A stretch of DNA of 64,000 nucleotides. Source: Perkinsus chesapeaki ATCC PRA-425. Taxonomy: Eukaryota; Protista; Perkinsozoa. Positions 20,616 to 59,310 of this stretch are shown piece after piece; the first letter of the stretch is position 1; each line of letters starts with the position of its first letter. Position numbers and translations under genes: made by a program. The stretch spans positions 1 to 64,000 of the forward strand of contig JAAPAO010000107.1 of NCBI GenBank assembly GCA_013115145.1. Reading direction: 5' to 3'. The notes under the pieces are model-generated. The model was not told where the DNA came from and searched no databases. It saw only the letters and a list, made by a program, of their open reading frames with translations.

Positions 20616-20768
20616 TAATAAGGGAAAGACACTCCTTTAATATGGCCTTCGGTATGGCAGCGCCAATTCCAGCAGCAAACCCCCGATCTTCAGGGAATCG
20701 CCACGACGGGCTGCTGCATCAATACCTCAGGCCAACAACTAGAAATTGCTGAGGGCCAACTACATTGT

Positions 20769-21572: not shown

Positions 21573-22097
21573 GAGAGATTTAACCTATTGAGAACAGAAC
21601 ACAACTGCTGAGGAAAGCCAGTGACGAGAATTCCGCTAAAAGCCACCTTGCGGCTTCAATGCATTACTGTAAACGAAGAACTCAAGACTAAATGGATGGG
21701 GGAGAGACCGAATGAAAATCACATCCCAGAAGCATCATAAGTGAACGCTAGGATGTGAATGCTGCTATGGCGAGCTCCGTCAAGACCAAGCTTCATCGGT
21801 CCAGACAGGAGGAGAGGGCCAAATGCAGTACAGAAGTTAGGTAACCCCGTTTTTGGTTATGTTCTATTTTCAGAAGCTCACAGGGCGGGAACTATCATCA
21901 CCCTGTGGTGAATGACTAGTATCGAAAGTGTATCAGTAGACGAGGATGACGACAAGGGGAATACGGGTACAATAGTTCACAACTGTATATAAAAGGTCGG
22001 AACTATCATCACCTTCTATACCCAAATAGATGGGGAAATACAACTAGGGAAGAGAAAACAGGTAGAATTAGAGACCAGAGATTTACCTACTCAAAGT

Positions 22098-22694: not shown

Positions 22695-23452
22695 CGCTAA
22701 CGGTAATGCCAAGGCAAACGGAACGCTAACAAACAGATGAAGGATATCTTTACAGGAAGAAATGAGCTCAGATTTTAAAAGGTGACTTGAGGATTTCAGA
22801 TCGTCCATATATTAGTCGCTATAATGGTTGCGTTCGATGACGACGACAACGAGCAGCTCGACGACGCAATGAAAACATTTAATGCAGTTGCAAGAAATTT
22901 TCTTTTGGCGCATAAAGGAAAAGCAGCATTTTTGATCGGTTTTAAATACTGGAAGTGGAGTTATTGAACGTTATGGAGAGATATTGCTGACGTTCACTCC
23001 AAATTCGTTCCGAAATGGGACCTATTCCGTTAGGATATCCGTGAGCCGTTTTTTCAAATTTTCAAGACCCGTGGAGCAGTTGTAATTGTAACAACCGTAG
23101 TGGGGAATCTAAGTCTCACCTGGAGAGGGTTTACGGAGTCTGCTGAATAAATGCTCCCTCGATTAAACATTTGGAGCCATGTGAAGGGTCCTTCACAGTA
23201 AGACATCAATTTGGGGCCCTCCGACCGGCTTGAAGACCCGTACTAAACAGCTTTTCCTCGACCTGTCGTATTTGCTCTATATAAGCCGAAAGCGGTGAAT
23301 GCTCTGCGGGCTTGAATTTAACGGTGAATATCTTAAGAAATCTCATAAATGCTCACGAGACCCACCTCGCTTTGTGGTGCTTACCATATCCGGGCTACTT
23401 ATTTCGTATCCAATCATACCGTTTGACAGCAGGAGCTCTCCTATTTTAATTA

Positions 23453-36582: not shown

Positions 36583-37599
36583 CTATCTTGATAACACCTT
36601 CTCCACAGCCGCGCCAGCATCAATCAATCCAAATGGAAGGGTAACTCTCGGAGTGAGTTGAATACCCTTCCTAGAGGTACTCTTGATGATTTGTTTGACT
36701 TCAACGGGAGACAGATTAGGGTTGAGACTGTAAAGCATTGCAGCCACACCCACAACGATGGCAGATGCTGCTGAAGTCTTATAGGCGACACCATAGTGCA
36801 TAACATCGTTGTTGTATGTAGTAAAAATTTTGTCACCTGGTGCAGCAATGTCCACGCAATCTCCAAAGTTCGAGAACCCTTCCAACTTCATTTCAGTCCT
36901 TTCTGTCGCAGCCACACATAACATTCCACGTAGTCGCTCAGTTAGAGCGCATGGATATCTCTTATCTTCGGTGATATTAGTCGCATTATTTCCAGCGGTC
37001 ACGATAACGAGCATTCCTGCTGCTATCGCTTGCTCAATCTTTTCTGCTAACTGTGGTAACGGTTCAGTGCCAGAAAAGGGCAAATGGATCACTTTAATAT
37101 TACTTGCATCCTTCTTGTTAATGGCGTATTCTACCGCGTTGGCATAGACCCCATCAGTCCATTGGTCTTCCATGGAGATCGGCATAATGTTAACAAGGTT
37201 CGTGACACCAGCAATACCGATAGAATTATTGGTAGTAGCGCCAAATATACCGGCCATCGACGTACCATGCCCATGCTTGTCAGGAGTATTGGTAGTTTTG
37301 TCAATGACATTATAACCCTTGACAAGACTTCCGACTAGGTCGGGATGGTCTGGTTTAACTCCGGTATCTAATGAGGCTACTGTAACTCTCTTCCGTGATG
37401 GGACCGATGCCATGCGCCTCCACGCTGACGGTATACCAACAAAATTAAAGTATGGTTCCTGATCGTCGTAGAAGGGGTCGTTTACAGGGGGACCATTTTC
37501 GATACCGACTCCAACTCCCCGTGCTTGTCGAATAGCCACTATTGTGGAGAAGGGGTACACCAGGAAGAATAAGCGGGAGCGTAAATTTAGCCCATTCAT
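36583..37599 (-). CDS. Subtilisin-like (S8, thermitase-type) serine protease 1
   Basis: LDTG, HGHGT, AGNN, YKTSAA; NDP..Q mature start; TNNSIGIAG Ca loop; likely ATG 37599. Confidence 0.93.
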   Translation of the reverse strand: MNGLNLRSRLFFLVYPFSTIVAIRQARGVGVGIENGPPVNDPFYDDQEPYFNFVGIPSAWRRMASVPSRKRVTVASLDTGVKPDHPDLVGSLVKGYNVIDKTTNTPDKHGHGTSMAGIFGATTNNSIGIAGVTNLVNIMPISMEDQWTDGVYANAVEYAINKKDASNIKVIHLPFSGTEPLPQLAEKIEQAIAAGMLVIVTAGNNATNITEDKRYPCALTERLRGMLCVAATERTEMKLEGFSNFGDCVDIAAPGDKIFTTYNNDVMHYGVAYKTSAASAIVVGVAAMLYSLNPNLSPVEVKQIIKSTSRKGIQLTPRVTLPFGLIDAGAAVEKVLSR

Positions 37600-39745
37600 G
37601 GCAACTAGAATTATGTGTAAATTATGCGAGTTATTATGAGGCCTTAGCCGTGACGCTCCACGCGCCATGCTGTCTATTTGATCTATTTAAGCATAGCCCG
37701 TCCATTCCCCTGATGCTACTCTTTGATATCGTTTCATCCCATCCCTCGGAAATAAACCCTAGACTATTGCGTTCGTCAACCCATGTCCTACAATCTGGTA
37801 GCAGCTCCTTGCTATGGTCGACGCTCCCTCACGATATACTTCACTATCTGCCCGGTTAGGTTGTACGCGCAGTTGAACGTATCGACAACGCAATAGTGTC
37901 TTTTATTCTTCTCAAGCAGTAACCGTATCCGGGCATCTTCCGGGCGGCATAGGGTGGGCGGGATAAACCGAGAGCACGGTGCAACTAGGGCGAGTCTCTC
38001 ACGCAGATGACCGGCCCCTCTAGTAGACTTGTTGTAGGATTCTGCGCAGTCTATGTGCATGTGTGCTATAATAATCTATAGCTAAGCGGCCGGCGCGGTT
38101 GGGTATCGCCTGCCCTTGGTGTGTTCTTGGTTATCACTCCTATCTCTAGCGTGAGCTAACTATCCCTCAAGGTCCCTCCTGTTGTGTTAACGAATCTGAG
38201 CCTCTAGTTCTACATCAACTAACTAGTTCACCGAACCCAATAACAGACTCTTCGAAACCGTAAGCGCATCACGTTCGCACAACACATAAAATCTCCTCAA
38301 CGTATGCGCCAGAACCGCTAGAAACAATGGGCGAGTTGCGAGGACCGACGGATCGCTAATGGAGGTAGAAGCAGAAAGCTTCGCCGACAACCCCCAACGT
38401 CGTAGTGATCCAACGGCGCGTCGCAACTCCCCATGTTTCGCTCAGTCGAGGGTAGCTCGGGTTGATGCTTAAAATATACGGCAAGCCTTGCCGGGCGAGG
38501 CAAGACTTAGTTCGCTGCTTTATTACGACTCGGCTACAGTTCAGCTGCGAGCAATGCTGGGTTTAGCGAATTACCGCAATTTAGTTGATAATCGTATTTT
38601 CCTCTTCCTGACATGGACCGAGTTATAATATATGGCTTTGCCGCGGTTCAGCGACGTTTTTTAGATTGCGGTGTAGGTTTTGATGGGCCAGGGGCCCTGG
38701 CCCAGGGCCATGGACCAAGGCCGTACTATTGTATAATCTGTACACGATGATTGTATGATCGATGAGGCGCCGTTCAGTAGCAACCGCTTTTCCCGTAGAC
38801 TGAGGCTCGATCACGTGAGAAGTGGTTAGTCACTCAACTGCTTGGGAAGTACTATTTCCATAACAGACGCATAGAGCAGCATCACCCTAAGAGAGGCTCG
38901 TATGGTACAGCTTATTCCTGGTAAAATGCGAATTTAGCGTTAGTGCTCTGTAGGACTTGTTTGGGTACAAGTTTACGCGCCGAATTTGATCGCCTGGGGA
39001 TCATCGCCGATCTCCTCAGTTGAGTGTCATTGTTCTTTGAACGACGTCGAGACCCACACATTTTTTCGTATGCTGTCCTCAGTAGTTGACATTAGACTTG
39101 CTTACCAGCTGGCTGGTGATATTAGAGCTTAGATACAATCGAGGTAATCGTTGAGATATTCTGCGGATTGGACATGTTTCAACAATGGGAAAATCCAAGA
39201 AGAGGAAATGATACGCTGTGGTGATACATTGCCTGCCTAAGAACATCTGAGCACAACTCGCACGCTTGAAGAGGTGACATCATTTCATGGCAGAGGAGCT
39301 CGAAACGCCGGCAAGCGAGAATTCAAGCGATCGGACTGGAGCATCTTAACACGGGATCAAATTCAGAATCTTGTCGGATTGGGGTAGGCAAAATGCTCCA
39401 ACGCGTATGCTCGATGCGAAAGGCTATGAAGCTCTCAGCGGCACTCTCTGGGAAGCTTCTTCAGCAATATGAACAGCTTCCGCAGGTTTCTCAGGTACGA
39501 TGCTAGTTTTTCAGTGTATGACGTACGACAGATAAGTTTCTGCATTGCTCCATCATCAACGCCTAAGCCATCAATTCAAGAAGAACGGCGGATAAGTTTG
39601 GTTGACAGAGAGATAGTGCGCTTCCCTGCTCTGTCGCATACGAACTAGCTCCACTGGAGTTAGGACACATGCCCTCGTAGGGAGCGCGAGTGACTTTCGC
39701 GTTCCCCTACGTTTCTAGGAATAACCACGGGGAGGTCTCTGAGCG

Positions 39746-40378
39746 CTATTCCCGTACTTCTTGATTAATTCTATACGGCCCTGAACTCGCTCCATGACTG
39801 GACCTACACGGAGGCTGGAAATATTCCCTCGCAGGAAGCCCGGCGAGCTCCGTGGGAGTGTCTAATCTCAACGTGTAGTCACCTTCGGAAACAGACCTTT
39901 TATCTCTGTGGTGGATGGCGTAGTCTACGCTGTCGCACAAGACTTGCTCAAAAATTTCAAGTTCCACAGCAATAGGCATGATGTTGACGAGGTCCATGAC
40001 ACCTGCAACACCGAGAGAGTTGTTAATAGTAGCACCAATAACACCAGACATTCTTGTACCATGTCCAAACTTGTCAGCGGTATTAGTGGTCTTAGTAACC
40101 ATATTATAGCCCGGAATAAGATTGACCAGGTCGGGATGGTCTGGTCTAACTCCAGTATCGACCAGGGCTACAGTAACCTTACTTCTTTTCGCTGGGGCCG
40201 AAGCCATACGCTCCCACGCTGTCGGTACGCCAGTGAAACCGAGGTAATATTGCTGAAGATGATAAAGAGGGTCGTTCACAGGAAAGTCCTCTGCGAGATC
40301 GACCACATCTCGCCCGAACAGTCTAGAAGTTACTATTCTGCTGATGACGCAAACGGCAGTGAGAAGGCGGTTACACAT
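39746..40378 (-). pseudogene. Truncated subtilisin 2 (N-terminal half only)
   Basis: Signal peptide, VDTG and FGHGT are present; homology to paralogs stops at DYAIHHRDK (about 39902); no oxyanion Asn or catalytic Ser segment found. Confidence 0.85.
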
Positions 40379-41426
40379 GTTTTGAACAAGGAACCAGCTA
40401 TTTGGGTTTACACTACGTCTCGCTTGTCATGTGAGGGAGCCCCTGTGACGCTCCATTACTGGTGAAGGATCCATCGATAGGATGCTGTTTGCGATTTGCC
40501 TAAAAGAGTAGGATGTCTGTAGCTGTGCGCCACAAACACACCAATGCTGTTCTTGTTCAACCGGCATACCATGCCTGACAAGTCAGCTTATGTGGTACGG
40601 AAAATGTTTGTTGGTCGCGAAGTACGTTGCCACACGAGGTCACCTGCATTTACGAAATTCGCTACTCCAGCGGCTGTTCACGTGGCTTTTTTTATAAATT
40701 TCAGTTCAAAGATCATCGATCGTGGTCATCCGATTTTGTTCATCCAAGAGGCTAGGATAAAGGCCAGAAAGCAAAGCCTTAGCGGCTCAACTACTTGACG
40801 GTGCATCTGCGTTGCGGAGGGTGAAGTCGCCGATATGGTATCATATGGAGCGTCTCCATGAATTCGGATTCCTCAGATACGTCGTATCACTCTACCGTGC
40901 ATGCTTAACGCGATAGGAGGTCGGGTTTCTAGAGCATGAGAATCAGAGACTAAACGATCGTTGACGCAGGACGCGAGTTGTCTCACCGCTCTGTGAGCAT
41001 AACAGAGGAGACTCCACGTGAGCCAGTCGTGGAGGACACGGGGACAGAACAGGCTCGACTGGTGACAGGACTACTGCTCAGTTAATGGTGGTAGGACAAT
41101 GGACGAGTTTCCTATCACCAATGGTACACGAACAAGAGAGTATTTCTCACCAGCCTCGTGACAATCATCAAGTACTCTCCGAGACAATCATCTCCCGCTT
41201 CCGCGTTACCGACGGATCTGTCTAGTATCTGAGTGGCCAAAAGAGACATGCTAACACCAATAAAAGCAGTCAAAGCCACCAGCAGTACAGCAATCATTGA
41301 GATACGTTATGTAGTACTCTCTGTACATCGCGATTAACGATTGGAAACGGTCGCATGCCATTAGAACGAGTCCGCCGCTTGCACCCCCAAGACTTGGCGA
41401 TAGGAAGTTGTTGGGGTTTCTGTGAG

Positions 41427-41554
41427 GCACAGTTGAGTTCATCCCACCCGAAGTTCTCTGAGCAGCCGTCCTCGATCCTAAGAGCGTTGCTTATCATGAA
41501 CGATGTGACATGTGGTTACTCGGTATTGTTATCTATGCCTTGTGCTACAATCGG
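41427..41554 (+). pseudogene. Orphan degraded copy of the kinase exon at 31291-31418
   Basis: 128-bp copy of GCACAGTTGAGTTC...TGTGCTACAATCGG with the GTAAGATC donor retained and an in-frame TGA at 41459. Confidence 0.9.
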
Positions 41555-42224
41555 GTAAGATCTTGTTTCTCAAATGGGCCATTCGAAATGGCATCTAATG
41601 TATCTCGACGCAGCAAATCGCTGCCAGCAATACGGCTTCATAGTCTCGTAATGAAATTATTGGCTTCAAGGTTTTTAGCTGAGCAAGGACAACGCTCTCA
41701 GTACCCTTCACGTGCCGGTATATAATGATCTAGGCATAATTCAGACTAGCCAAAGAGCTCCAACGTGCATGTTTGACACGACAGAAGGTAAGACTCTCAG
41801 CTCTACCACTTTAGGAAGACTTTCTACGAGAGAACCTCAAGATATAATGGTATACAGCCTGTAAAATACAGGGCCAGTTGCAGTGGGACACTGACATAAT
41901 AATAATCTCGTGGTCGTGGCCGCGACTCAATTCGATCGAGCTTGGTTATAAAAATTGACCTGAGCGACAACTCGGTAAGTTCGGACCGGGTCTTGCGGGC
42001 TATGGAACTTGTCGACGTTAGGTGTAGAGGCGATGACTAGAAAGAACACTACACTTGCAGTCTAACCGGAAACTAAAGCCCTTTACTATGTGGGCGAGCG
42101 TTCCACGGACAGCGCGATTGACGCATTATCATGTTGGCTTTTGCCGAAGATAAAAGAAATTCATCGAAGAGAATTATCAATGAAGATTTAAAAAGTGACT
42201 TCCCTCCAAATAGTAAAGATATGT

Positions 42225-43217
42225 TCATAACAGCTTCGCCACAGCCGCGTCGGCATAGACCAACCCGAATTCCAGTGGGATACCAGGAAAAAGCTTTATA
42301 CCCTTTTTAGAGGTATCCTTGAGGAGTTCCTTCGCTTCAATAGGAGATAGATTCGAGTTGATGCTGAAAAGGATTGCCGCAACACCAGCAACGATGGCAG
42401 ATGCCGCTGAAGTTCCAGAAAACTCACCGTAAGGCTGACTCAGCAGAGTCGTTTTGATAGACTTACCAGGCGCAGCAATGTCAACATAATTTCCGTAGTT
42501 GGAGAAGGCCGCCAATGTCATGTCAGTGCTGTCTGTCGCAGCAACACATAACATTCCTGGCACCCGCCTAGTTAGAGAGCACGGATACCTTCGGGCTCTC
42601 GTGATATTCTCGGCATCATTCCCAGCGGTGACGATAACAAGTATCCCCGCCGCTACCGCTTCTTGGATCTTTTCCTCTACCTTCATTCTCAACACTAGGC
42701 CAGAAATAGGCATAAGGATTACTTTGATATTCATTGCATCCTTGTGGCGAATGGCGTAATCAATGCTATCAGCTTCGGCCTTTTCATCGAAGTGTTTTTC
42801 CAAAGAAATGGGCATGATGTTGACAAGGTCTGCGACACTAGCAATACCGATAGAGTTATTGATAGTAGCACCGACGACACCCGCCATCATTGTACCGTGT
42901 CCACTCTTGTCAGATGTATCCGTAGTTTTCTTAATAACATTATAACCGGGAACAACATTTCCAACTAGGTCAGGATGGTCTCGTTCAACTCCGCTATCGA
43001 TAAGAGCTACCGTAACCTTCCTTCTTGCTACTGTGGCCGAAGCCATACGCTCCCACGCTGCCGGTACACCAGCTAATTTTAAGTAGGGTCTCTGTTGGCT
43101 GTATAAAGGGTCGTTTACAGGCAGATCATTTGCTTTACCGGCTACACTCCCTTCAGCCTGCCTTACAATTACCCCTGAACAGATGAGAGTCAGCACGGTG
43201 AGGAGTCGGTGGCACAT
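42225..43217 (-). CDS. Subtilisin-like serine protease 3
   Basis: IDSG, SGHGT, AGND, SGTSAA; signal peptide. Confidence 0.95.
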   Translation of the reverse strand: MCHRLLTVLTLICSGVIVRQAEGSVAGKANDLPVNDPLYSQQRPYLKLAGVPAAWERMASATVARRKVTVALIDSGVERDHPDLVGNVVPGYNVIKKTTDTSDKSGHGTMMAGVVGATINNSIGIASVADLVNIMPISLEKHFDEKAEADSIDYAIRHKDAMNIKVILMPISGLVLRMKVEEKIQEAVAAGILVIVTAGNDAENITRARRYPCSLTRRVPGMLCVAATDSTDMTLAAFSNYGNYVDIAAPGKSIKTTLLSQPYGEFSGTSAASAIVAGVAAILFSINSNLSPIEAKELLKDTSKKGIKLFPGIPLEFGLVYADAAVAKLL

Positions 43218-44330
43218 AATCGAACGAGGAATCGTTTACCTGGTTTCACTGCGTCTCCCTTGTCCCATGATGGAGCTTCCTGTGGCGCTCCACCGTTGGC
43301 GGAGGCTCTATGAGTTGAATCCTACTATGATGCGGTACATTTGCTGGACGTCAGTTACTTGTGGCTTACGCGCACCCCACTGCGGTTCAAGTATAAGTTT
43401 TCGCGTCTTACACTGCTACTCAGCCTATCCTGCCGGCTGGAAAGTGTTTCGCAGTTGCAGACAGGAGGATCTTGCCACACGAAGTCACTCACATTGACGA
43501 AGTTCGCTACTCTCGAAGCTGGTCACCTGGCTTCATCATGTTTGTTCACAGATCATCGATCGTGTTTGCCTCATTTTAGTGATTCACGGGGCTAAGAGGA
43601 ACCTTATTCGAGAAGTCCTTGAGAGGCCGAGAGGCAAAGCCATAGTGGCTTAACTGCTGTGTAGCTAAATTGGGGAAGGATCGCCCAAATGGTATCCTAC
43701 GGAGGGTCTCTATGATGTTGGATACGCCGAGTTTTCTTAACATGCATTTTTAACGCGATAAAGGGTAGTGTTCCAGGAGCACGAGAATCGTAGGTTGATC
43801 AAGCAAGTTGTGAGGACCATGACTAGAACGACCACGTTCTCTCGTCGCCTTATGAGTATACCAAAGAAGGCTCCACGTGAGCCAGTCATGGAGCCTTATG
43901 GGGACAGGACAGGCTCGACTGGTGACAGGACTTCCATCCACTAAACGCCGGAAGGACAGCAAGTAATAGTTTTGTCTTCTTCTATATACACAGAGATGAG
44001 TGGTCACGTCCTAATGATGCAGATTGCTTCTGTCGAGGAGTTCTCGAAGCGATCATCCCTCGATGGTCGGTTCTCGTTGCTTCGTTCTCTCTTTGAAGGT
44101 TGGTCCCTATGTTTCTACAGTACACATACACCGCAATATATATGTTAGCCTTTCACGTTTGCAACCGTTCTACTAAGAGTCCTTCCAATCTACACTTTGT
44201 GAGACTTCATGACTTGCCGAGCATTTAATTGATCATCCGAGCCTTATTTCTGAGTCAGTTGAGAAATTAAGGTTCCTCGAAGATTTATTCAATTTTTGTG
44301 GATGTGCCAGATTTCTTCAATCGCCCGCCT

Positions 44331-45175
44331 ATGGACTTCCAAACGCAGCTCGCGCGCTTAAAGTCTATCCGAGAGGCCCTCGAGGCGCCGGAACGTAAAG
44401 CCTCTGCAGCTACCCGACTGGACCCTGCAGCATTATTACAGGAAGAATGGGATCGTATTAAGGCTCTCCATCAACTTGGACTAGCGAAAGTGCTTGAAAA
44501 CGCCTGTTCAACGCGAAAGGGGAGAGAACGCTTGGACCACGAAAGACATGAATCAAACAAGGAAAATGCTGTGCCGCCGCTCTCTGAAGAGAGTATCCCA
44601 AAGAAGAGTCCTCTCCGCGAGCTAGTAGTGAATGCTCCGAGACTACCAGCAAAATGGGGGCAGGACAGGCCTCTCTCTTCCGAGCCAATGTGGCGAGACA
44701 CCGACGACATTGTCCTGGACTCAGATGCCATGAGAATTCTCATACCTGCAGAGTATCATGTGGCAATTGGCGTGAATGAGTACAATGAATGCTTTAAAGA
44801 TGTTAATGAGAGATGTGAGTTCACTAGCTGGCACACTACGATTTATTATGGGAGATAATTGCGTTGGTGTGGCGACGACCAGGAATGCTTCCATGTTTCA
44901 GTGAGACACATAGAAGAGAGGCTATTCGACGCTTCACGGAACCATGACGTGCATAGCCCTTGGAAACAAGCGGGTCCCGGCACGACCTTACTATCTCAGG
45001 ATGAGCGTACGGAACCAAATTCTAATTACTAGCTTCAGTGTCTCTGTGCAGATAATGCCGATGAAGAAGCGCACAGTCATAGTCACCAATTGCCGGTTGA
45101 AGGTGCGAATGCACAGATACGGCAGAGTGTGCTCACTGAAGTATCGAAGACATATGTTTCTATTGTATAGGTCTA
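44331..45175 (+). CDS. Hypothetical coiled-coil protein, multi-exon
   Basis: 186-codon ORF (ATG 44331) ending at a GTGAG donor near 44815; plausible short downstream exons; end approximate. Confidence 0.6.
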
Positions 45176-49502: not shown

Positions 49503-50724
49503 ATAGGCGATAGGTTTAACGTGTTCTCCCATACAACATTACTGCCTTGCGTACGCTCACTCCAATCCAGTAAAGGTGTCAGACCCAGCTAAATCCAGAT
49601 AGAGTCTTCTGCTCGAGTCCGTCGCCTCATCGGGAGGAAGTTTTCTTTGAGGAGATTTCCGGCAGTACTGATAACATCTCTTCAAGTACGGATGTATAAC
49701 TCGCCACGTTGATAATTGGAGGCTACCAATGAAATACTTAATACCGAAAACCTGCTGCAGCTTGAATGGATTTAGGGTACATCAAGGCGGGAGCGGCCAC
49801 GAAGTTGGTTTTGAGTCGACAGTCGCACGCACACGCTGGTCACTGCGCGCGCCTTGATCTCGATATCTTCTGGTGCTCATATAATAGGCACAATGTGACT
49901 GAGTATGCAACTCTTTTGTGCCGTTTGTGTAAAGTGCTTCAATGAGTGATGCAAATCTATGCTCAGCCCTTTTGGTCTCGTCATATTGGCAATTTGCTTT
50001 TGAAGTCATGTCTCCCGCCAATCACATCTCGAAGGGGCCAATGAAAGTTGAGAGGTAGGGTGCTGCAATATGCCAGGCTCTTCCATACTTTATCGGATAG
50101 GAGATCTCACCGTCTAATGTTCAGGTTGACAGGAATAGCGCAAGACTGCGTTGTATCGGCAGTATTGTTCATCGCATTTTGCTACTGCTGGGGGGTGGGT
50201 GATGGAAGGTGGGTGAACAGGTAGAGTCCCTCAATGTCACGTCACTGGCTCCCAGGAGTTTCGCTGAGACCATCGACAATGTTGTCCATCTAACGTTATG
50301 GTTTTTACCTCGTAATTTAGCCGTAGGGGCACACTGGGTAAGATCACGTAAACGACTTCATTATATATCATCATTTCTAGGTCTTCTCTTTGGTCGCCAT
50401 CATCGGCTCCATTTGTCTTGCCGTCTCTCCGATACCTGGTCTGGGTAACAGGAAGGTTGTGAAGGCGGCCTCGTTCTGCATCACACTCGCCGCGGCCTAT
50501 CAGTTTATCATGCGATGTCTCACTTCTGGTTTGTCCTCAGTGCTTTCTGCTGTGTCAATTTGACTCTGTACAGGTCCATGGTGTATTCGTTCGGTAGTCT
50601 GCGTAATCATACCGGTTGCTATGTCGATGTATTCTCCTCGAACCAAGGCAGTCGATGGTTTATCTCAATTCTCGGCTTGGGTATCTCAGCTATGCCTACG
50701 GTTAAGACATCTCTGTCGTGCTAG

Positions 50725-52068
50725 GTTGTCTCCCTCCGTATTCCACCGTTTGCTGCTCTCATCGCTCCGGTTTCTATAAGCCTTATCACTATGGAATCCT
50801 TGGGAGCGTCAATAATAAGTGCCGAGAAGGCTAATGCTGCGGTTAGCTCCGAACTATCTAGTGCGCTGTTAGATGCTGCATTAGGTTTTCGCCCTGTGCC
50901 TCTTGCAGGCCGCCGCTAACCAGATTAACTCGGTCGCGGATTTCTATAACGGTATTGATGATGTTCAGACTGCGTCTGACAGGAGCTTAGTAGACGGAAT
51001 ACTCACACCGAAGTCCATGGTGAATCTTCCTTTATCGGTATCCTCTCAAAAACATGTTCAGATATGGTCAGCCGTGTGTCTGACCAGCATATCAGCCGTT
51101 CTCCTGCTATCCACCTTGGTTGGTCTTGACTATTCCTATTGGGCATACGCAGTCGCCGTTTGGACTTTTGAAGCATCGCTGGCGGTAGTGATTGCTCACT
51201 CCATGGAATACGGCAGCAGTTTGTTTTCCAGGTGTTTTACACTTACGGTCCATTCCCACTAAAATACTATGCTATGGGCGACTTGATCATGTACGTGTAT
51301 ATTCTGGCGCCTTTATCGAATTTCGCGTGGTCTCTCCCAGATTCCTTTTCTTTGGTCCTGGTGTGTGCGCCATGCTCGCCCTATGGACTGCCGATCCTAC
51401 CGTATCCCTCTCTATTATTCCAGTGGTTTTCCTCTTTGTATTGCCGAGTCTCCTTGTTACCATTGGTGTAAGAGTTCGTCCGGCTCTCCCTGCACCGATG
51501 TAGCTCTCAGATACTCAACGCTAACAACATTCGTGATCTAGATTCTGACACTGAGGCTGGTATATATACGGTTGCTAACCTGCTAGGTCACAAAAGAAGT
51601 CGCATGTATGTTAGCGTGTACCCTCCTTATAGCGACGAGTTTGCAGTTACTTCACCGTCCTTCAATTGGCACCACATCTACTGTCACTTCTCATCGCTTA
51701 TTTCTATCACTGCTATGGCATACTCTTTTCATTAGCTATCATGCCTCGATCTCTCTCTACAGTGTGAGTATACCTATCATTTGCTCCTTTATTCTCGAGG
51801 CTTGATTCAGTACCCACGTCTGTTTGGGCGCCCAGGATGATCCCCAATATAAGATGGTTGTCAAGTACGCCTCGCATACTACGCTCATGTATGGCCTTAT
51901 TACGGCAATGGGCATAGCCACTGCTCCGATGGGGGCTGGTCTTGGTGAGGTAACTCTTTGAATACCTCAGATTTCTAAACAATTCCCCTGTTTCAACTTT
52001 TTCAGGTCAGTCTCGGAGGAGTCTTCGTGTCCTCAGCTGTATGTGCATTCCTGTACCGCGTTGGCTAA
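50725..52068 (+). CDS. UBIAD1: UbiA-superfamily prenyltransferase, UBIAD1/MenA type, multi-exon
   Basis: QAAANQINSVADFYNGIDD, SDRSLVDG, YTYGPFPLKY.AMGD, NANNIRDLDSDTEAGIYTVANLLG; stop at 52066-52068; additional 5' exons probable. Confidence 0.85.
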
Positions 52069-53741
52069 ATAGTTCGCACGGAATAGGCTCAGGCTCATTT
52101 TTCGCGAATGTGGAATTTTATTTTCGTAGAGTGACTATTGACGATCTTTTCTCTAATTGCCAAGTGTAGGCACATACCATCTCTCCTTAATCGCTGATTG
52201 GTGACTGCGCCCTGCGCGCAAGACGTCCTTGCTACACTCATTACTGTCTCATCATCATGTTAGACGAGATTTCGAGTTGGCTGGAATGTTTTTTGTTCAA
52301 TTTTCAAAGTGATTGGTCAAATACACATAGGCCAGACAAGGGACTGGGATGCCTCGACACGCACTAATTTCCCGAGTACATTTCAATGCTTCAGCATTTT
52401 TAGACTCCCATAGTGTATAGCCTATCACGCAACCGCGACCAATTGTTGAGTAACAGCGGTTAAGTTCGGGCTCTGTGGGGTTAGTATGCAAAGCTTGAGG
52501 CTCTGCATGATTCTAGGGCAGTAATCATAATAAGACTAGCGAGGCTCTTAACAGTCTGCGTATCTAATGAACGCTGGCAATGTGACAGGCCTGACGATCC
52601 CTGTCACTTGTTCTCTACCATTAGGTATTTCTCCACGTCGTTTCACGGACGTCGCGGTGCCTAGTTGCCAAGGCATTTGCGTTAAATCAGCTTTCTTCTC
52701 GAGCCGTACGGAAGATACCGCGTCCTGCTGTGTTGTTCTCCTTCTACCAGTGGAAAATGCCAACGAACCAATTTTCGAATTCCACGTAAGGCTTAGCCGG
52801 CTTGCAACCGAGTAGTCCATATCAAACTTGAGCCGCTTGGGTGCAGTCCTTCATTCCAAAAGTAAACCGACTGGGAATCTGAGAAAGTGTAGCCATTTTG
52901 AATCGGAGTGTCCGGCATTGAACCACGCCAAACAGGTAGGTGTCTATGAAGGAGTTCGGCATACCGCCTCATTGCTCCTCCACATGTGTCACGAATGCGC
53001 ATACCAATCTCGACTCAGTTTACCTTGTTCGGACATAATAGTCTGCATAGTTCCGACCTTCTATTAGGCCTGAGAATGACTAGGGTATCGTGAGGTAGCC
53101 TTGTGGTGCCTCGACATAACATAAAGCAATTTCTACGGATAGCTCCACGGTGAGGTATCCATTGCAGCACAATGTACGCGCCCATGGGACAAAGAATGCA
53201 CCGCAAAGACTAATGACCCAGCTTGACACTGGAAGATCAGTGGGCTTATATTCATGATCTGTTGACCGGAAGATCTCATTCCTTTATATAATTTAACTCG
53301 TGTCGTCATCCTCAGTTATTTCGCTGTGGCACTATTCATTAGGCACAGCAGCGAAAACACAACCCGCACGATTGAACTATGTGTTCGAAGGTGAACACAA
53401 GGAGCTCCTGCAGTGTAGGACCTACACCAGCACAAACCGCCTCATTTGGAAGGGTGACTTCGTAACAAGGCTTGCAGCTGTGGTCCCGCACTAGACGAAC
53501 TCGGAGGCCATACATTCTACACATGTTGCTTTTTTCCTGGGCGAACGAGCCCCGCAACAACCCAATATAACGTGAGGTGGTGTCTACGGGAGGCGCCATA
53601 GTTAAACCTCCATTACAGCGCAAGGCGCGCACCCATGACGAAAAAGAAAACACAACGAAGCCTACTGACCAAGCTTGACAATGGAATAATTGTGGGTTCA
53701 TATCCGTAAGTTGTTCAACAGAAGGTATTCTCTTTTCATAT

Positions 53742-54740
53742 ATGTTCCGTCTTCTCGTCAACCTCGGCTATTTCGCTGGTGCTCTGGCCATCAGACATAC
53801 CGGAGAAAACATTAGCGGTATGGCAAACGGCCCCCCAGTGAACGACCCCCTCTATAAGAATCAGGCATCGTATTTAGAAGCGATTAACGTTCCCGCAGCG
53901 TGGAAGCGCTTGGCCTCGACCAAGGTGGCGAGAACGAGGGTCACAGTGGCTCTCATCGATACCGGTGTGAAACCAGACCATCCTGACCTAATTGCTAACC
54001 TTGTCAAGGGCTACAATGTTTATGATCATAGTGATAATACTGGCGACCAGGAAGGACATGGTACCGAAATGGCTGGGATACTCGGTGCTACTATCAACAA
54101 TAGAGAGGGAATAGCTGGCGTGATGGATCTTGTCAACATCTTTCCAATATATGAAGGTATAACTGACACACCTCCAACTACCATAGCTGCCATAGACTAT
54201 GTAATTCGTAACAGGAAATCCAAAGGCATCACCTTTATACTGATGGCGTCTTCGGATGAGACGATTGAACCGGCGGTAGTAAGCAAGATTAAAGAAGCTG
54301 ATAAAGCAGGAATACTTATGATTGTCACTGCCGGAAATAAGGGCAAGAATATTACCACCGAGAAAACCTTCCCATGCTCTCTAACTGAGCAACTGAGTGG
54401 AGTGTTGTGTGTGGCGGCCACAGAGCAGTCGAAAATGCAGCTGCCTTACTTCTCGAACTTCGCTAGCTACGTTGACATTGCTGCACCTGGTGTTAATATT
54501 ATGACTACTGGCAACGACGTCAATTACAAAACTATGCCAGGCACATCTCCAGCGGCTGGAATTGTTGCCGGTGTGGCTGCTATGCTCTACAGCGTTGCTC
54601 CTAAGCTAACCCCTGCTGATGTTGAGAAGATTCTTAAGGACACTTCGCGAAAAGGTCTCAAAGATTCCAAAGGGAAGACGACTCTTGCATTTGGACGAGT
54701 TGACGCCGACAAGGCCGTAGCGAAGCTGATTCCTAGATAG
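53742..54740 (+). CDS. Subtilisin-like serine protease 4
   Basis: IDTG, EGHGT, AGNK, PGTSPA; signal peptide. Confidence 0.95.
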   Translation: MFRLLVNLGYFAGALAIRHTGENISGMANGPPVNDPLYKNQASYLEAINVPAAWKRLASTKVARTRVTVALIDTGVKPDHPDLIANLVKGYNVYDHSDNTGDQEGHGTEMAGILGATINNREGIAGVMDLVNIFPIYEGITDTPPTTIAAIDYVIRNRKSKGITFILMASSDETIEPAVVSKIKEADKAGILMIVTAGNKGKNITTEKTFPCSLTEQLSGVLCVAATEQSKMQLPYFSNFASYVDIAAPGVNIMTTGNDVNYKTMPGTSPAAGIVAGVAAMLYSVAPKLTPADVEKILKDTSRKGLKDSKGKTTLAFGRVDADKAVAKLIPR

Positions 54741-56224
54741 TTCTGACATCTGTGAGATGATGCTATATATCGGTATTGAAAGCTATCACATCTTGATGAC
54801 ACTTGGGTGTTCTTTAGTCTAAGCTCTTGGATTGTATCTTGGGCTTCATAAACTTTTCGTTCGGTTCGCGCCTTGTTGATCTTGTATATCTTTCGAAAGT
54901 TTTGTTATATCACAGCAGAGCCGAGTTCATCACAAGTATTCATTATGGGCGATTCATCTTGCTGAGGAAGAGATGCAGTTCAATACTACTCGCGCTCGAG
55001 GACTAACCTTTTCATCCCTCTTGGATTCAGCATAGAGTGCTGTTCAGCATTCTTGTGGCTAACACGTTCCATGCGATCTCCTTAGGCGGAGACTCGGAGT
55101 TATATTGGTGAAACACATGAGAAACGTGCCCGAAGCTTATCACGTTTGAAAGGCATCATGAATAGTTCTATACCTTCGTAGGCATTGTAAAATAGGATAG
55201 GATCGAATTGACTAGCCAGTCAATGCGCGTTTGCCGACTGGCATTCACTGAGAGGGTTCTGTCCTAACACCGCATTCGTTACTTTATGTCACGTTGCTGT
55301 GGACAAGTGCGACCATGACATCGTGTAGAGGGAGCACTTGTGGACGGAGGGGAGGCATGACATCAGGATACATGGCAATCTGGCATCGCGGCTTGTCCGG
55401 AGACAGTCGAACACAATTTGTGTCAGGCAGAGCGAGAGGCTAGGCACTTTACAAGTGACGTTTCTATCACAGACTATCGCTGGGATAAGAAGAAAGTCAC
55501 ATTAGTGACGAGGTTGCCGACAATACCTCCTCGTGTGTGTGTTTATAGTCCAATGGCGAAGAGGGCTTAGTTAGACTATCCATACTATGTGCAGATTCCG
55601 AACAAGAGCTCAATACCTATACTAATCACTGTATGGTTCACTCAAAGGACTGCAACTAGTATCAACTTGACACTGTCAAGAGACCCTACTACCTCTGCGG
55701 AGGCGCCCAAGTCGCGCCGTCTGTTCAAGGTTCCTCGCGGCTTCTTCCACCTTTTAGACGCTTCACCACTTGGGACCGAGCCCGAAAACATCTTGCCCTA
55801 TCTTGGAGTGTCTGACGGTAAGCGCATGAACTCTTCACAGTCGCATTATCAGGGCCACCCGAGTCATCATCTGTCATTACTCGACGCATAGATGACGGCT
55901 ACGTCTCCTTCTTTGGAATCTTCTTCCACCGCGCGCCGAACGGGACACGTTACCCGGGGCAGTGCCTTTTATCATGCAGAATATGTGACGGGTGTAGCCG
56001 GGCAAGTTACGGCATTTCTTATATGTTATCCAGCTTCGTACGCTCTTGTACCGACATGACGTAATTAATGCAGAAAAGATGGTAGTTACGCCACTTCCTA
56101 CGGGAAGTTACTCTCCCCTAAAATGCCATCCAAGGAGCACCATCAATGTGACGCCCTCCACTGCCGATAAGCACTGACAATCAACGCAGCTCTGCGAGCC
56201 CTTCCACCTCTCCGGCTACATAAT

Positions 56225-57244
56225 ATGCATCGACGCTTGACACTTCTCTTATTCGTCAGGTCGATGATGACGACTAGAACCCCAAGCGAAGATCAGAGCG
56301 GCACAGCAGGCGGCCCTCCTGTGACTGACCCTTTTTATTTCGAGCAGGCGCCATACTTGAAGCCCATTAATGTTCCGGGTGCGTGGGAACTTCTTACTTC
56401 TACTAGAGTGAAGAGAAAGAGGGTCACAGTCGCTCATATCGATACCGGAGTGAAGATTCCGGTGCATCCTGACCTGCGTACAAACCTTGTTACGGGTTAT
56501 AATGTTATCGATCATAGCACCAACACCGCTGACAAGGTTGGGCATGGTACGCGTATGGCTGGTATACTTGGTGCTACTATTAACAACTCTGTCGGTATAG
56601 CTGGTGTGATGGACCTTGTCAACATCATGCCCATTTCTCTCGAAGATCAATATGAGGCACGTCGCCAATCTGAGGCCATCGATTATATTATTAGGAACAA
56701 AGAATCGAAGAACATCAAAGTAATTCTTATGCCCATCTCATTCAGCATCACCACTCAGGAGTTGGCGAACAAGGTCAACGAGGCCGCTCAGGCAGGAATA
56801 CTCATGGTCTTCACCGCTGGAAACCAAGGCAGAAATATCACTGAAGCGGGGATGTACCCGTGCTCTTACACTCAGTCGGTGGAAGGTATTCTATGCGTTG
56901 CTGCAACGGGGCGGTCGAATATGAATTTGATCCGCGACTCAAACTTCGCTGACTATGTGGACATCGCTGCGCCTGGTACTGATATAGCAACTACGGGCTT
57001 CTTGCGTCCTTACGAAGCATCGGAGGGAACTTCTCCAGCATCTGCTATCATTGCTGGTGTAGCTGCTATGCTCTACAGTCTTGCCCCTGATCTAACTCCT
57101 GTCGATGTCAAGAAGATCATCAAGGATACTTCTAAAAAAGGCGTCAAAAATGCTCAGGGAAAGCCCGTTCGGTTCGGGCGAGTCGATGCCGCCAAGGCTG
57201 TAGCTAAGCTGATCCCGAAACGCGCAAGGGCCGTTGCACACTAA
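56225..57244 (+). CDS. Subtilisin-like serine protease 5
   Basis: IDTG, VGHGT, AGNQ, EGTSPA; short hydrophobic N-terminus. Confidence 0.95.
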   Translation: MHRRLTLLLFVRSMMTTRTPSEDQSGTAGGPPVTDPFYFEQAPYLKPINVPGAWELLTSTRVKRKRVTVAHIDTGVKIPVHPDLRTNLVTGYNVIDHSTNTADKVGHGTRMAGILGATINNSVGIAGVMDLVNIMPISLEDQYEARRQSEAIDYIIRNKESKNIKVILMPISFSITTQELANKVNEAAQAGILMVFTAGNQGRNITEAGMYPCSYTQSVEGILCVAATGRSNMNLIRDSNFADYVDIAAPGTDIATTGFLRPYEASEGTSPASAIIAGVAAMLYSLAPDLTPVDVKKIIKDTSKKGVKNAQGKPVRFGRVDAAKAVAKLIPKRARAVAH

Positions 57245-58311
57245 ATCATCAGTGCAGGCGGTCGTGGTGAAAGTTTTTCAGCCAACAAGCCTCAGCTCTT
57301 CACCGAGGTTCTTCTACAATTCTTTCGACGTGACAGTGACACGTCATTCGCTGCCAGCGAGTCGCTGGAAGTGACCTTCGGTAGGGGTTATGTTATTAAT
57401 GCTCCGAGATTGAGGCTCATCAGGCGTTTAGTTCCGTCTCTCGTTGTCCTATATCAAGCTCGTCCTCTAATGAATGTTGAGTTGCACTCCAATGCGATCT
57501 AGAGCTAAGTTAACCACGTACTTCGGCAAAGCCAAATGGCAGATCTGACTGACAGATGAGACTTAACTCAATGAGACTCTCAAACTAACTGAATTGAGAC
57601 TTAACTGAATCGATGGTAGTGGTATTCACGATCTCTGCGACGTTGGGCTAGTCAACGTGCTCCAACCCGCACGATAAATGATAAGCGCCAGTAGATAAAG
57701 CCTTCCGCTCCACCTTGCCGTGAGACAAAACTGCTACTTGAGGATACGAGATCAATCATCATTGAACACCCTCAAAAAAGCAACTTCTCTCGAGCGAAGT
57801 TCCTCGTAAGCTAAGTTCGTTGGTAAGTGTATCATCATTTATTGTACGGTTCAATTTGTACCACATGTCTGTACTATAGTACTATGTAAGTTCATTCGAG
57901 GCATTAAATGATGCGTCACTGCGAACTCAGTTCATCAAGATAGCGATACGGCATTAAAGCCGCCGTGAAATATCTAAGTTATCGCCGCTCCTCGGCTGAG
58001 CGTGTTTACCTTGGACGTATGGGCTATACACCCAAGATCAACAATACTGTAATACAGTATAGCAGTTGGTAACTAATGACAAAACTTTTCATGGACTTTT
58101 CGTATAGCTCAAACACTTCCGTCAGGACGCTTCAGATACAAGTTGTATCATACAACCTGCTCGGTGCATCACCGGACTGAAGTTGCCACCGAAGACACAC
58201 CAGCAGTCGATAAAAACGGCTGAAAAATAAATGGAAAATACCGAAATAGGATACCACTATGTTTTGCTCAAGTAGGTTATCACTCGATATATTATTATGC
58301 AGATAATAGAG

Positions 58312-59310
58312 CTATCTTGATAGCAGCTTCGCCACAGCCGCGTCAGCATCAACCAAGCCGAATTTTAGAGTGTCCTTTGGAGTGCGTTTGATACCCTGTC
58401 TGGAAGTATCCTTGATAATTCTCTCCACAGCAACAGGAGATAGATATGGGTTAAAGCTGTAGAGCATTGCAGCCACGCCAGCAATGATAGCGGATGCTGG
58501 TGACGTTCCATAACAGCTGCCATACCGCATAGGAAGCAAAGTTGTTGCAACTGCTGCACCAGGTGCTGCAATGTCCACGTAATCTGCATAGTTAGAAAAC
58601 GATGCCAGCTTCATCTCAGTGTTCTCTGTCGCGGCAACACACAACATTCCCGGTAGTCGCTTTGTGAGAGCGCACGGGTATTTTTTATTTCTCGTGATAT
58701 CCTCGCCTCCATTTCCTGCAGTTACGATGACGAGCATTCCCGCTGCTACGGCTTGCTTGATTTTTTCCTGCACCTTTTGTTTCCGATTGAAGCCGGAAAT
58801 AGCCATTAGAATTATTCTGATGCCCTTTGCATTCTTGTTGCGAATGGCGTAATCTATGCCGTTGGCTTCGGTTTCTTCAGTGAAGGTTTCTTCCAAACAG
58901 ACAGGCATGATGTTGATAAGGTCCGTAACACCAGCAATACCGATAGAGTTATTAGTAGTAGCACCCAAGACGCCAGCCATAAGTGTACCATGCCCATGCT
59001 TGTCAGCTGTCTTAGTAGTATTCCTTATGACATTATAACCCTCGATAAGATTGCCGACTAGGTCAGGATGGTCCGGTTCAACTCCTGTATCGACAAGAGC
59101 TACGGTAACCTTTCTCCGTACCACTGGGGCCGAAGCCATACGCCGCCATGCTGCTGGTACACCAGCGAATTCTAAGTATGGTTCTTGAAGCCTGTAGTGA
59201 GGGTCATTTACGGGAGGGTCATTCCCGATTTCTGCTGCATCCCCCTCTGCTTGCCTAATAGTCACCGTTGGGGAGATTAAGTAGACCACGATGAGGGAGC
59301 AAGGCCGCAT
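58312..59310 (-). CDS. Subtilisin-like serine protease 6
   Basis: VDTG, HGHGT, AGNG, YGTSPA; likely ATG 59310. Confidence 0.95.
   Translation of the reverse strand: MRPCSLIVVYLISPTVTIRQAEGDAAEIGNDPPVNDPHYRLQEPYLEFAGVPAAWRRMASAPVVRRKVTVALVDTGVEPDHPDLVGNLIEGYNVIRNTTKTADKHGHGTLMAGVLGATTNNSIGIAGVTDLINIMPVCLEETFTEETEANGIDYAIRNKNAKGIRIILMAISGFNRKQKVQEKIKQAVAAGMLVIVTAGNGGEDITRNKKYPCALTKRLPGMLCVAATENTEMKLASFSNYADYVDIAAPGAAVATTLLPMRYGSCYGTSPASAIIAGVAAMLYSFNPYLSPVAVERIIKDTSRQGIKRTPKDTLKFGLVDADAAVAKLLSR

What the first reader, a model, noticed from the sequence alone, without database searches (positions are those of the whole stretch)
36583..59310. Array of six subtilisins that appear to lack a propeptide
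Seen: in every copy the hydrophobic leader is followed after only about 10-15 residues by PVNDP.Y..Q, equivalent to the mature start of thermitase (YTPNDPYF). The catalytic Asp is at about residue 73-75 and total length is about 330-340 aa, with no introns. Established: classical subtilisins need an I9 propeptide of about 75-80 aa as folding chaperone and inhibitor. Inference: these secreted proteases fold and are restrained by another route (ER chaperones, a propeptide supplied in trans, or Ca/pH control). This would be an unusual expanded family of minimal subtilases and is my best candidate for an undescribed system here.
Basis: partly seen in the sequence, partly recalled or inferred. Interest (0 to 1): 0.75.

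Follow-up and report, generated by a model that had tools for sequence, protein, structure and literature searches.

The report
Prodomain-less secreted subtilases of Perkinsus
A clam parasite (Perkinsus chesapeaki) carries a cluster of five intact genes and one broken gene for secreted subtilisin-type proteases that have no folding/inhibitor prodomain, a rare but not unique design that belongs to a large parasite-specific gene family.

Summary
The window is Perkinsus chesapeaki nuclear DNA. It carries five intact single-exon S8A subtilase genes (330-339 aa) and one 5' fragment (S2).

In each gene a signal-like hydrophobic leader is followed within about 10-15 residues by PV(N/T)DP. This aligns with residue 4 of mature thermitase. 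An AlphaFold2 model is disordered for residues 1-27 and a complete subtilisin fold from residue 31. No prodomain-like coding sequence exists anywhere in the window, and in-frame stops lie 6-54 codons upstream of the start codons.

The genes belong to a single Perkinsus-only clade, with at least 25 copies in P. chesapeaki and at least 6 in P. marinus. All share this design, keep the catalytic residues and the thermitase strong-calcium-site residues, and evolve under purifying selection.

Other Perkinsus subtilases do carry a real prodomain and share a Perkinsus-specific cysteine pair with this clade. The prodomain was therefore probably lost.

The premise that subtilisins always need a prodomain is too strong. 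Intracellular subtilisins, Aeromonas ASP and a few bacterial signal-then-NDP subtilases are precedents.

No RNA data could be obtained, so the transcript structure and the folding route remain inferred. My verdict is a new variant of a known kind, of moderate interest.

The parts
36583..37599 (-). S1: intact subtilase gene, 338 aa from the ATG at 37599. An alternative in-frame ATG lies at 37668. The Ser motif reads KTS instead of GTS.
   Evidence: ORF list; PF00082 at E 8e-39; the gene caller's product P0004 starts at M24; motif table.
39746..40378 (-). S2: truncated copy. Only 39890-40363 (residues 12-170) is subtilase-like. The oxyanion Asn and catalytic Ser regions are missing. It is a probable pseudogene.
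   Evidence: tblastn; no C-terminal half in 37669-39900 at E below 0.1; PF00082 profile positions 2-93 only.
42225..43217 (-). S3: intact subtilase gene, 330 aa. Leader is MCHRLLTVLTLICSGVIVRQA, followed by EGSVAGKANDLPVNDP.
   Evidence: The NCBI model P0003 replaces the leader with an 18-residue upstream mini-exon and adds no prodomain.
53742..54740 (+). S4: intact subtilase gene, 332 aa.
   Evidence: It falls in a different subclade from S1, S3 and S6.
56225..57244 (+). S5: intact subtilase gene, 339 aa. The motif is PVTDP and the hydrophobic core of the leader is weaker (LTLLLFV).
58312..59310 (-). S6: intact subtilase gene, 332 aa from the ATG at 59310. The leader and linker (residues 1-32) span 59215-59310.
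   Evidence: AlphaFold2 model with pLDDT 92, residues 1-27 disordered and 31-332 folded. Foldseek match to thermitase 1THM with TM 0.91.
53181..53360 (+). Partial duplicate of the 5' end of S4 (upstream region plus the start of the leader), about 450 bp upstream of the gene.
   Evidence: tblastx 53181-53360 against 53633-53812, 42% over 60 codons; tblastn S4 residues 5-23 at 53302-53358.
40379..41072 (-). Upstream block of S2 that was co-duplicated with the upstream block of S3 (43218-43932). The similarity is not frame-consistent, so the block is probably non-coding 5' flank or promoter.
   Evidence: blastn 39962-41072 against 42798-43932, 65.6% over 1174 nt; tblastx hits fall in several frames and on both strands.

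Best explanation
The region holds five functional genes and one decayed 5' fragment of a Perkinsus-specific clade of thermitase-like S8A subtilases. They are made as signal peptide plus catalytic domain only.

Shown:
- No prodomain is encoded in the ORFs or anywhere else in the window.
- The catalytic triad, the oxyanion Asn and the residues that form the strong calcium site of thermitase are conserved.
- The mature domain is predicted with high confidence as a complete subtilisin fold starting 4-6 residues before NDP.
- The copies are old duplicates under purifying selection.
- Prodomain-bearing paralogues exist elsewhere in Perkinsus genomes and share a Perkinsus-specific cysteine pair with this clade.

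Inferred:
- The ancestor had a prodomain, which this clade lost.
- The proteins enter the ER through the leader and fold there on their own, helped by calcium binding that pins the NDP N-terminus and by the extra disulfide.
- They have no zymogen stage. Self-damage would be limited by compartmentation and export rather than by an inhibitory propeptide.
- Outside the cell they act as digestive or virulence proteases on bivalve host proteins.
- The gene expansion reflects diversification, possibly against host subtilisin inhibitors.
For: - PF00082 is the only domain.
- Thermitase residue 4 aligns with the NDP that follows the leader.
- AlphaFold2 gives pLDDT 92, with residues 1-27 disordered and 31-332 folded. 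Thermitase matches with TM 0.91, and deseasin and Plasmodium SUB1 catalytic domains also match.
- In-frame stops lie 6-54 codons upstream of each ATG.
- A 68-sequence bacterial prodomain HMM and the N-terminal domains of Perkinsus long forms find nothing in the six-frame window. The best E-values are 0.86 to 2.2.
- No neighbouring ORF was co-duplicated with the genes.
- The same leader-then-NDP layout occurs in about 30 paralogues and orthologues of P. chesapeaki and P. marinus, with hydrophobic cores at residues 3-19. The P. marinus gene is a single exon with a stop 2 codons upstream.
- All 30 short forms make one clade with SH-aLRT 100.
- dN/dS is 0.18-0.36 with dS of at least 0.8.
- The Cys pair is present in 33 of 33 Perkinsus S8s and 1 of 39 others. 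The calcium-site residues are conserved.
- An NxT sequon occurs in 19 of 25 P. chesapeaki members and in none of 39 bacterial relatives.
- The long-form P0048 model aligns from residue 15-16 with unprocessed pro-subtilisin E and pro-Tk-subtilisin at Z 39-43.
- Precedent for autonomous folding comes from ISP1 (PMC11419036).
- Perkinsus secretes subtilisin-type proteases that bivalve I84 inhibitors target (PMC2868825, PMC9198434).
Against: - There is no transcript evidence. Only two small same-species runs were listed, and no contig lay on 55300-60300.
- The signal peptide is judged from hydrophobicity only. No dedicated predictor was available, and the S5 and S4 leaders are weak.
- Folding autonomy, secretion and activity are untested.
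- The strong calcium site is retained. From my own knowledge, that site contributes to the folding barrier in subtilisin BPN'. So easy folding is not self-evident.
- The prodomain search has limited power for very divergent prodomains. In the positive control, cross-type detection only reached E about 0.01.
- The tree does not resolve the sister group of the clade. Loss of the prodomain rests mainly on the shared Cys pair.
Confidence: 0.6

Rival explanations
1. The catalytic domains still need a foldase, and it is supplied in trans. It could be the prodomain of a prodomain-bearing Perkinsus paralogue or a separately encoded chaperone, as Aeromonas ASP uses ORF2.
For: Prodomain-bearing paralogues exist. 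P0048 has a docked prodomain-like domain. A 400-aa type sits inside another array of short genes in L001, and a prodomain-like fragment lies at L001:8640-8777. The ASP/ORF2 precedent is cited in PMC9549277. The strong calcium site is retained.
Against: No prodomain-like or co-duplicated partner ORF lies in this 64-kb window. The short clade is only 30-35% identical to the long forms, so cross-recognition is not obvious. About 30 diverged paralogues would all have to keep one partner.
Confidence: 0.2
2. The gene models are incomplete. The real transcripts include an upstream exon (cis- or trans-spliced) that encodes a signal peptide and prodomain, and the apparent leader is intronic or untranslated.
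For: No RNA data could be laid on the locus. Perkinsus genes can have introns, and NCBI's model for S3 does use an upstream mini-exon.
Against: - A Met followed by a hydrophobic core sits 30-40 codons before NDP, in frame and without stops, in nearly all complete copies. This holds despite dS of 0.8 to about 1.9 and across two species, which is not expected of an intron.
- No prodomain-like coding sequence occurs in any frame of the window.
- The upstream similarity between S2 and S3 is not frame-consistent.
- The NCBI mini-exon adds 18 residues, not a prodomain.
Confidence: 0.05
3. The copies are inactive relics or pseudo-proteases that lost the prodomain because they no longer need to fold into an active enzyme.
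For: S2 is a truncated fragment. S1 has KTS in place of the conserved GTS. Four family members elsewhere have Cys in place of the catalytic Ser, and one has Glu in place of the catalytic Asp.
Against: The triad and the oxyanion Asn are intact in S3-S6 and in 26 of 30 family members. dN/dS is 0.18-0.36 over old duplicates. The fold is predicted with high confidence. P. marinus expresses several subtilisin-like ESTs with signal peptides (PMC2868825).
Confidence: 0.08

Closest known systems
Thermitase (Thermoactinomyces vulgaris, PDB 1THM/1TEC), S8A thermitase group
   Same: It is the best solved-structure match by sequence (E 3e-32) and by fold (TM 0.91, rmsd 2.2). It shares the N-terminal NDP motif, the residues at the strong calcium site, the D-H-S triad and the oxyanion Asn.
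   Different: Thermitase is bacterial and, from my own knowledge, is made as a pre-pro-enzyme. The Perkinsus proteins have no prodomain. They carry an extra Cys pair (C213/C224 in S6 numbering) and often an NxT sequon. Identity is about 30%.
Prodomain-bearing Perkinsus subtilases (P. marinus XP_002765035 = P0048, 489 aa; the P. olseni P0055 group; the 400-aa gene at L001:13936-15138)
   Same: Same genus, same S8A catalytic domain and the same Perkinsus-specific Cys pair. One of them lies inside an array of short genes.
   Different: They have a structured N-terminal domain of about 110-130 residues. It aligns with the prodomains of pro-subtilisin E, pro-Tk-subtilisin, SUB1 and fervidolysin. 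Identity to the short clade is 30-35%. P0048 also has a hydrophobic C-terminal tail.
Perkinsin / P. marinus subtilisin-like gene (MEROPS S08.041, AAQ54740; Brown and Reece 2003)
   Same: It is an extracellular subtilisin-type serine protease of Perkinsus, regarded as a virulence factor and inhibited by oyster cvSI-1 (PMC2868825, PMC9198434, PMC9549277).
   Different: I could not obtain its sequence or the paper. It is absent from the clusters I looked up and was not named among the listed hits. It is therefore probably a different subfamily. I recall a longer ORF for it, but that is unverified memory.
Bacillus/Planococcus intracellular subtilisin proteases (ISPs)
   Same: These are S8A enzymes without a classical prodomain that fold on their own (PMC11419036). 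They are similar in size and are good sequence matches (2X8J, E 1.5e-25).
   Different: ISPs are cytoplasmic with no signal peptide. They carry a roughly 18-residue inhibitory N-terminal extension with a LIPY/F motif (PMC6220982). The Perkinsus proteins have a signal-like leader, only about 6-12 linker residues and no such motif.
Aeromonas sobria serine protease ASP with external chaperone ORF2
   Same: It is a secreted subtilase that lacks a propeptide (PMC9549277, citing Kobayashi 2015).
   Different: ASP is a kexin-like S8B enzyme of a bacterium, and an adjacent gene encodes its chaperone. No conserved partner gene accompanies the Perkinsus copies.
Bacterial signal-then-NDP subtilases, for example Tumebacillus lacus WP_323372919.1 (P0254/P0279, 1250 aa), and metagenomic P0249, P0255 and P0038
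   Same: The signal peptide is followed directly by the (T)PNDP mature start with no prodomain. Identity is 35-38%.
   Different: Most have long C-terminal Ig-like or other domains. None is characterised. They make up only about 3 of 77 non-Perkinsus single-domain relatives among the best 150. They show no gene-family expansion.

Membership tests
Peptidase family S8A (subtilisin family) | Match to the Peptidase_S8 profile above the curated cut-off | tested here: met
   PF00082 scores 125-150 bits against a cut-off of 21.8 for the five intact copies, and 43.8 bits for the S2 fragment.
Peptidase family S8A (subtilisin family) | Catalytic triad in the order Asp-His-Ser, plus the oxyanion-hole Asn | tested here: met
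   The D(T/S)G, HGT, AGN and (G/K)TS motifs are present in S1 and S3-S6. S2 lacks Asn and Ser.
Peptidase family S8A (subtilisin family) | Subtilisin alpha/beta fold | tested here: met
   AlphaFold2 pLDDT is 92. Foldseek E-values are 1e-25 to 1e-29 against thermitase, deseasin, savinase and SUB1.
Thermitase group | Mature N-terminus with an NDP motif whose Asp helps form the strong calcium site, together with the HPD Asp and the NN loop | tested here: met
   The alignment to 1THM starts at its residue 4. D36, D83, N120 and N121 are conserved in 29-30 of 30 family members. Calcium binding itself is not testable here.
Classical pre-pro-subtilisins (I9 or fervidolysin-type prodomain) | A prodomain of about 70-130 residues between the signal peptide and the catalytic domain | tested here: not met
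   Only 30-39 residues precede NDP. There is no Pfam I9 or PF22148 hit and no prodomain-like sequence in the window. The model is disordered up to residue 27 only.
Intracellular subtilisin proteases (ISP) | No signal peptide, plus a short inhibitory N-terminal extension with a LIPY/F motif | tested here: not met
   A hydrophobic leader is present in most complete members. No LIP[YF] motif occurs outside a signal core.
ASP-type propeptide-deficient subtilase with external chaperone | A partner chaperone gene next to the protease gene | tested here: not met
   Self-comparison of 34-62 kb finds no conserved ORF co-duplicated with the subtilase genes. A partner encoded elsewhere in the genome cannot be excluded.
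Perkinsins (MEROPS S08.041) | Close sequence relationship to AAQ54740 | not testable with these tools
   The sequence is not retrievable and the paper is not held. It is not among the clusters looked up.
Secreted protein (classical secretory pathway) | Cleavable N-terminal signal peptide | tested here: inconclusive
   In most members a hydrophobic core with Kyte-Doolittle mean above 2 over 9 residues lies at positions 3-19, followed by small residues. No dedicated predictor was available. The S4 and S5 leaders are weaker.

The most novel reading that the evidence does not exclude
This would be a eukaryotic, secreted subtilase clade that has dispensed with both jobs of the prodomain. It would fold without an intramolecular chaperone while keeping the strong calcium site, and it would travel through the secretory pathway as an uninhibited enzyme. 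That would make it a natural counter-example to prodomain-dependent, kinetically trapped extracellular subtilisins. About 30 diverged paralogues would be available for mapping which substitutions remove the folding barrier.
Probability: 0.5. Interest if true: 0.55.

Novelty: new variant of a known kind. Interest (0 to 1): 0.42.

Why it matters
Extracellular subtilisins are the textbook case of folding that depends on a prodomain, which also keeps the enzyme latent. The documented exceptions are cytoplasmic (ISPs) or use a separate chaperone (ASP).

A large, conserved family of secreted, prodomain-less subtilases in a eukaryote would give a natural set of sequences for asking what makes the catalytic domain able to fold alone. 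It would also help explain how a cell tolerates an active protease in its secretory pathway.

For bivalve disease biology, these genes are candidates for the extracellular serine proteases of Perkinsus that host I84 inhibitors target. P. chesapeaki has at least 25 copies, arranged in several arrays, against at least 6 in P. marinus. That difference is a lead for studying host-parasite protease/inhibitor diversification.

Tried and rejected
1. RNA support. The run search listed only two small same-species runs holding none of the sampled words. Laying them on 55300-60300 (5001 letters, within the operators' limit) at 80% likeness placed no contig. Transcript ends, spliced-leader acceptors and expression could not be assessed.
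2. Hidden prodomain exon. A bacterial prodomain HMM and phmmer searches with the N-terminal domains of P0048, P0055, P0042 and the L001 400-aa gene found nothing against all stop-to-stop segments of the window. The positive control on L001 shows the cross-type searches are only weakly sensitive, at E about 0.01.
3. Adjacent chaperone gene. tblastx and blastn self-comparison found only the subtilase CDSs, the shared S2/S3 upstream block and a small 5' duplicate near S4.
4. A 3' half of S2. None was found.
5. Perkinsin (AAQ54740, Brown and Reece 2003). The paper is not held, the accession is not in the clusters looked up, and text searches gave nothing further.
6. The very high-scoring giant proteins in the big search (P0134-P0145 and others). 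They looked like possible fused arrays, but they are bacterial-type multi-S8 proteins, and each catalytic unit examined is preceded by a prodomain-like segment.
7. An ISP-like inhibitory motif in the leader. It is absent.
8. Earlier notes of this scan. None concerns subtilases.


Full report
**What is there.** The window is nuclear DNA of Perkinsus chesapeaki. The S6 product is the representative of a cluster seen on a 75,952-bp contig, and its nearest named relatives are FOL47_* proteins of P. chesapeaki and 'thermitase, putative' proteins of P. marinus.

Six ORFs between 36,583 and 59,310 match the Peptidase_S8 profile and nothing else above threshold:
- S1 36583-37599(-)
- S2 39746-40378(-)
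- S3 42225-43217(-)
- S4 53742-54740(+)
- S5 56225-57244(+)
- S6 58312-59310(-)

Five are intact at 330-339 aa. S2 is homologous only over residues 12-170. It lacks the oxyanion Asn and catalytic Ser regions, and no 3' half exists in the 2.2 kb downstream. It is a decayed 5' fragment. The array is not uniform. Orientations are mixed, and a 10.5-kb stretch without subtilase homology separates S3 from S4.

**No prodomain.** In all copies a Met and a hydrophobic stretch are followed, 30-39 residues from the Met, by PV(N/T)DPxYxxQ.
- phmmer aligns this NDP with residue 4 of mature thermitase, which is the best match among solved structures at E 3e-32.
- An AlphaFold2 model of S6, built on a 72-sequence alignment, has mean pLDDT 92. 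Residues 1-27 are disordered and residues 31-332 form a complete subtilisin fold.
- The model superposes on thermitase with TM 0.91 over the target. It also matches deseasin and the catalytic domain of Plasmodium SUB1.
- There is no C-terminal extension.
- In-frame stop codons lie 6-54 codons upstream of the start codons.
- An HMM built from the prodomains of 68 bacterial relatives finds nothing in any stop-to-stop segment of the 64-kb window. The same is true of phmmer searches with the N-terminal domains of Perkinsus long-form subtilases. The best E-values are 0.86 to 2.2.
- Self-comparison of the array shows no neighbouring ORF duplicated along with the genes. It shows only a roughly 700-bp, non-frame-consistent upstream block shared by S2 and S3, and a small duplicate of the S4 5' end.

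**Could an upstream exon have been missed?** I could not test this with RNA. The run search listed only two small runs of the same species label holding none of the sampled words, and no contig lay on 55300-60300. The indirect evidence is nevertheless strong.
- The Met-plus-hydrophobic-core leader sits at the same distance from NDP, in frame and without stops, in nearly all complete members of the family in two species. This holds even though synonymous divergence between copies is 0.8 to about 1.9.
- Family members whose database models appear to lack a leader have one just upstream in frame.
- The P. marinus gene I examined is a single exon with a stop two codons upstream.
- In a subtilisin precursor the prodomain lies between the signal peptide and the mature domain. 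Here those two are contiguous in one ORF.
- NCBI's alternative model for S3 adds an 18-residue mini-exon, not a prodomain.

**The family.**
- A word-index search found at least 25 P. chesapeaki paralogues of 295-338 aa and at least 6 P. marinus proteins of 334-344 aa. Bacterial thermitase-like proteins follow at 30-37% identity, and most of those carry a fervidolysin-type prodomain (PF22148).
- In a maximum-likelihood tree the 30 short Perkinsus proteins form one clade (SH-aLRT 100) on a long stem. The five P. marinus proteins form one subclade.
- The window's copies fall into three subclades: S1/S3/S6, S4, and S5. The array therefore holds old lineages rather than recent tandem copies.
- Another P. 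chesapeaki contig carries five S8 genes in 11 kb.
- dN/dS over the mature domain is 0.18-0.36.
- The triad and the oxyanion Asn are intact in S3-S6. S1 has KTS for GTS. Four paralogues elsewhere have Cys for the catalytic Ser.
- The residues that form the strong calcium site of thermitase are conserved. They are the NDP Asp, the HPD Asp and the NN loop.

**Origin.** Perkinsus also has subtilases with a long N-terminal region.
- An AlphaFold2 model of P. marinus P0048 (489 aa, pLDDT 86.5) gives a confident alpha/beta domain at residues 17-122.
- The whole model aligns from residue 15-16 with unprocessed pro-subtilisin E, pro-Tk-subtilisin, full-length SUB1 and fervidolysin at Z 37-43. Mature thermitase aligns only from residue 143.
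- A 400-aa gene inside the second P. chesapeaki array has a homologous N-terminal domain.
- All 33 Perkinsus subtilases in the alignment, short and long, share a Cys pair (C213/C224 in S6 numbering). Only 1 of 39 other sequences has it.

I read this as common ancestry within the lineage followed by loss of the prodomain in the short clade. The tree itself does not resolve the sister group.

**How unusual is it?** A full scan of 1.84 billion cluster representatives gave 77 non-Perkinsus single-domain hits among the best 150. In 70 of them, more than 80 residues precede the NDP-equivalent position, and in seven, 45 or fewer. On inspection about three of those seven are real signal-then-NDP proteins, and all three have long C-terminal domains. 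They are P0249, Tumebacillus lacus WP_323372919.1 and P0255. One short metagenomic protein (P0038) has the same layout.

The literature I could read states that prodomains are the rule. It names ASP of Aeromonas, with its external chaperone, as an exception (PMC9549277). It also shows that intracellular subtilisins fold without a large prodomain and use a short LIPY/F extension for inhibition (PMC11419036, PMC6220982). The Perkinsus leader has no such motif. The design is therefore rare but has precedents. I found no paper that notes it for Perkinsus.

**Mechanism.** The following steps are inferred, not shown.
- The leader takes the protein into the ER. A family-specific NxT sequon, present in 19 of 25 P. 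chesapeaki members and in no bacterial relative, fits passage through the secretory pathway.
- The catalytic domain folds without an intramolecular chaperone, stabilised by calcium at the conserved site and by the extra disulfide.
- There is no zymogen step, so restraint would come from compartmentation and rapid export.
- Outside the cell the enzymes would degrade host proteins. P. marinus secretes subtilisin-type proteases, expresses several subtilisin-like ESTs with signal peptides, and is countered by bivalve I84 inhibitors (PMC2868825, PMC9198434).

The main rival is a foldase supplied in trans, by a paralogue's prodomain or by an unlinked chaperone. I cannot exclude this, and I rate it at about 0.2.

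**Verdict.** The prodomain is truly absent and the family is expanded. But the 'established' premise is too absolute, the genes are already in databases, and the folding route is untested. This is a new variant of a known kind, of moderate interest.

Noticed in passing
window 43272-43291, 40435-40454, 37640-37659 (minus-strand genes S3, S2, S1); similar sequence about 45-80 nt upstream of S6 (about 59355-59390): A short inverted-repeat motif (GGAGCGYCACRGG..GCTCC, followed by ATCATGGG) lies 40-95 nt upstream of the start codons of S1, S2, S3 and S6. It contains a small upstream ATG. It may be a shared promoter or 5'-UTR element, or it may only reflect shared ancestry. The pattern count alone is not significant: 6 matches against 2.6 expected.
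   Followed up: partly
window 42225-43217 and upstream: The NCBI gene model for S3 (P0003, FOL47_000432) replaces the signal-like leader with an 18-residue upstream mini-exon (MYRIIEAPSWDKGDAVKP). Several other family models start at internal Met codons and so appear leaderless. These are probably annotation errors.
   Followed up: partly
L001:13936-15138 (-) and L001:8640-8777 (-), P. chesapeaki contig JAAPAO010000015.1: A prodomain-bearing S8 gene of 400 aa sits inside a second array of short prodomain-less genes. It ends shortly after a GAS motif at the catalytic Ser position. A prodomain-like fragment (E 1.6e-5) lies about 1.2 kb from another short gene.
   Followed up: partly
family members P0009, P0018, P0026 (P. 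chesapeaki) and P0032 (P. marinus); P0022: Four paralogues have Cys in place of the catalytic Ser (GTC), and one has Glu in place of the catalytic Asp. They may be pseudo-enzymes or thiol variants.
   Followed up: no
(database searches): No P. olseni member of the short clade appeared in either search, although P. olseni long-form subtilases did. The clade may be absent, fused in gene models or highly diverged in that species.
   Followed up: no
window 480-2018 (-): A pepsin-type aspartyl protease gene (PF00026, E 5e-47) has about 110 residues ahead of the catalytic domain, which is a normal pre-pro layout. This contrasts with the subtilases in the same window.
   Followed up: no
window 18942-22808 (-), 23453-25057 (+), 61646-62854 (-): Three RING-finger genes, a cyclic-nucleotide phosphodiesterase gene and a SET/MYND-domain gene flank the array. 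They are ordinary eukaryotic neighbours with no apparent link to the proteases.
   Followed up: no
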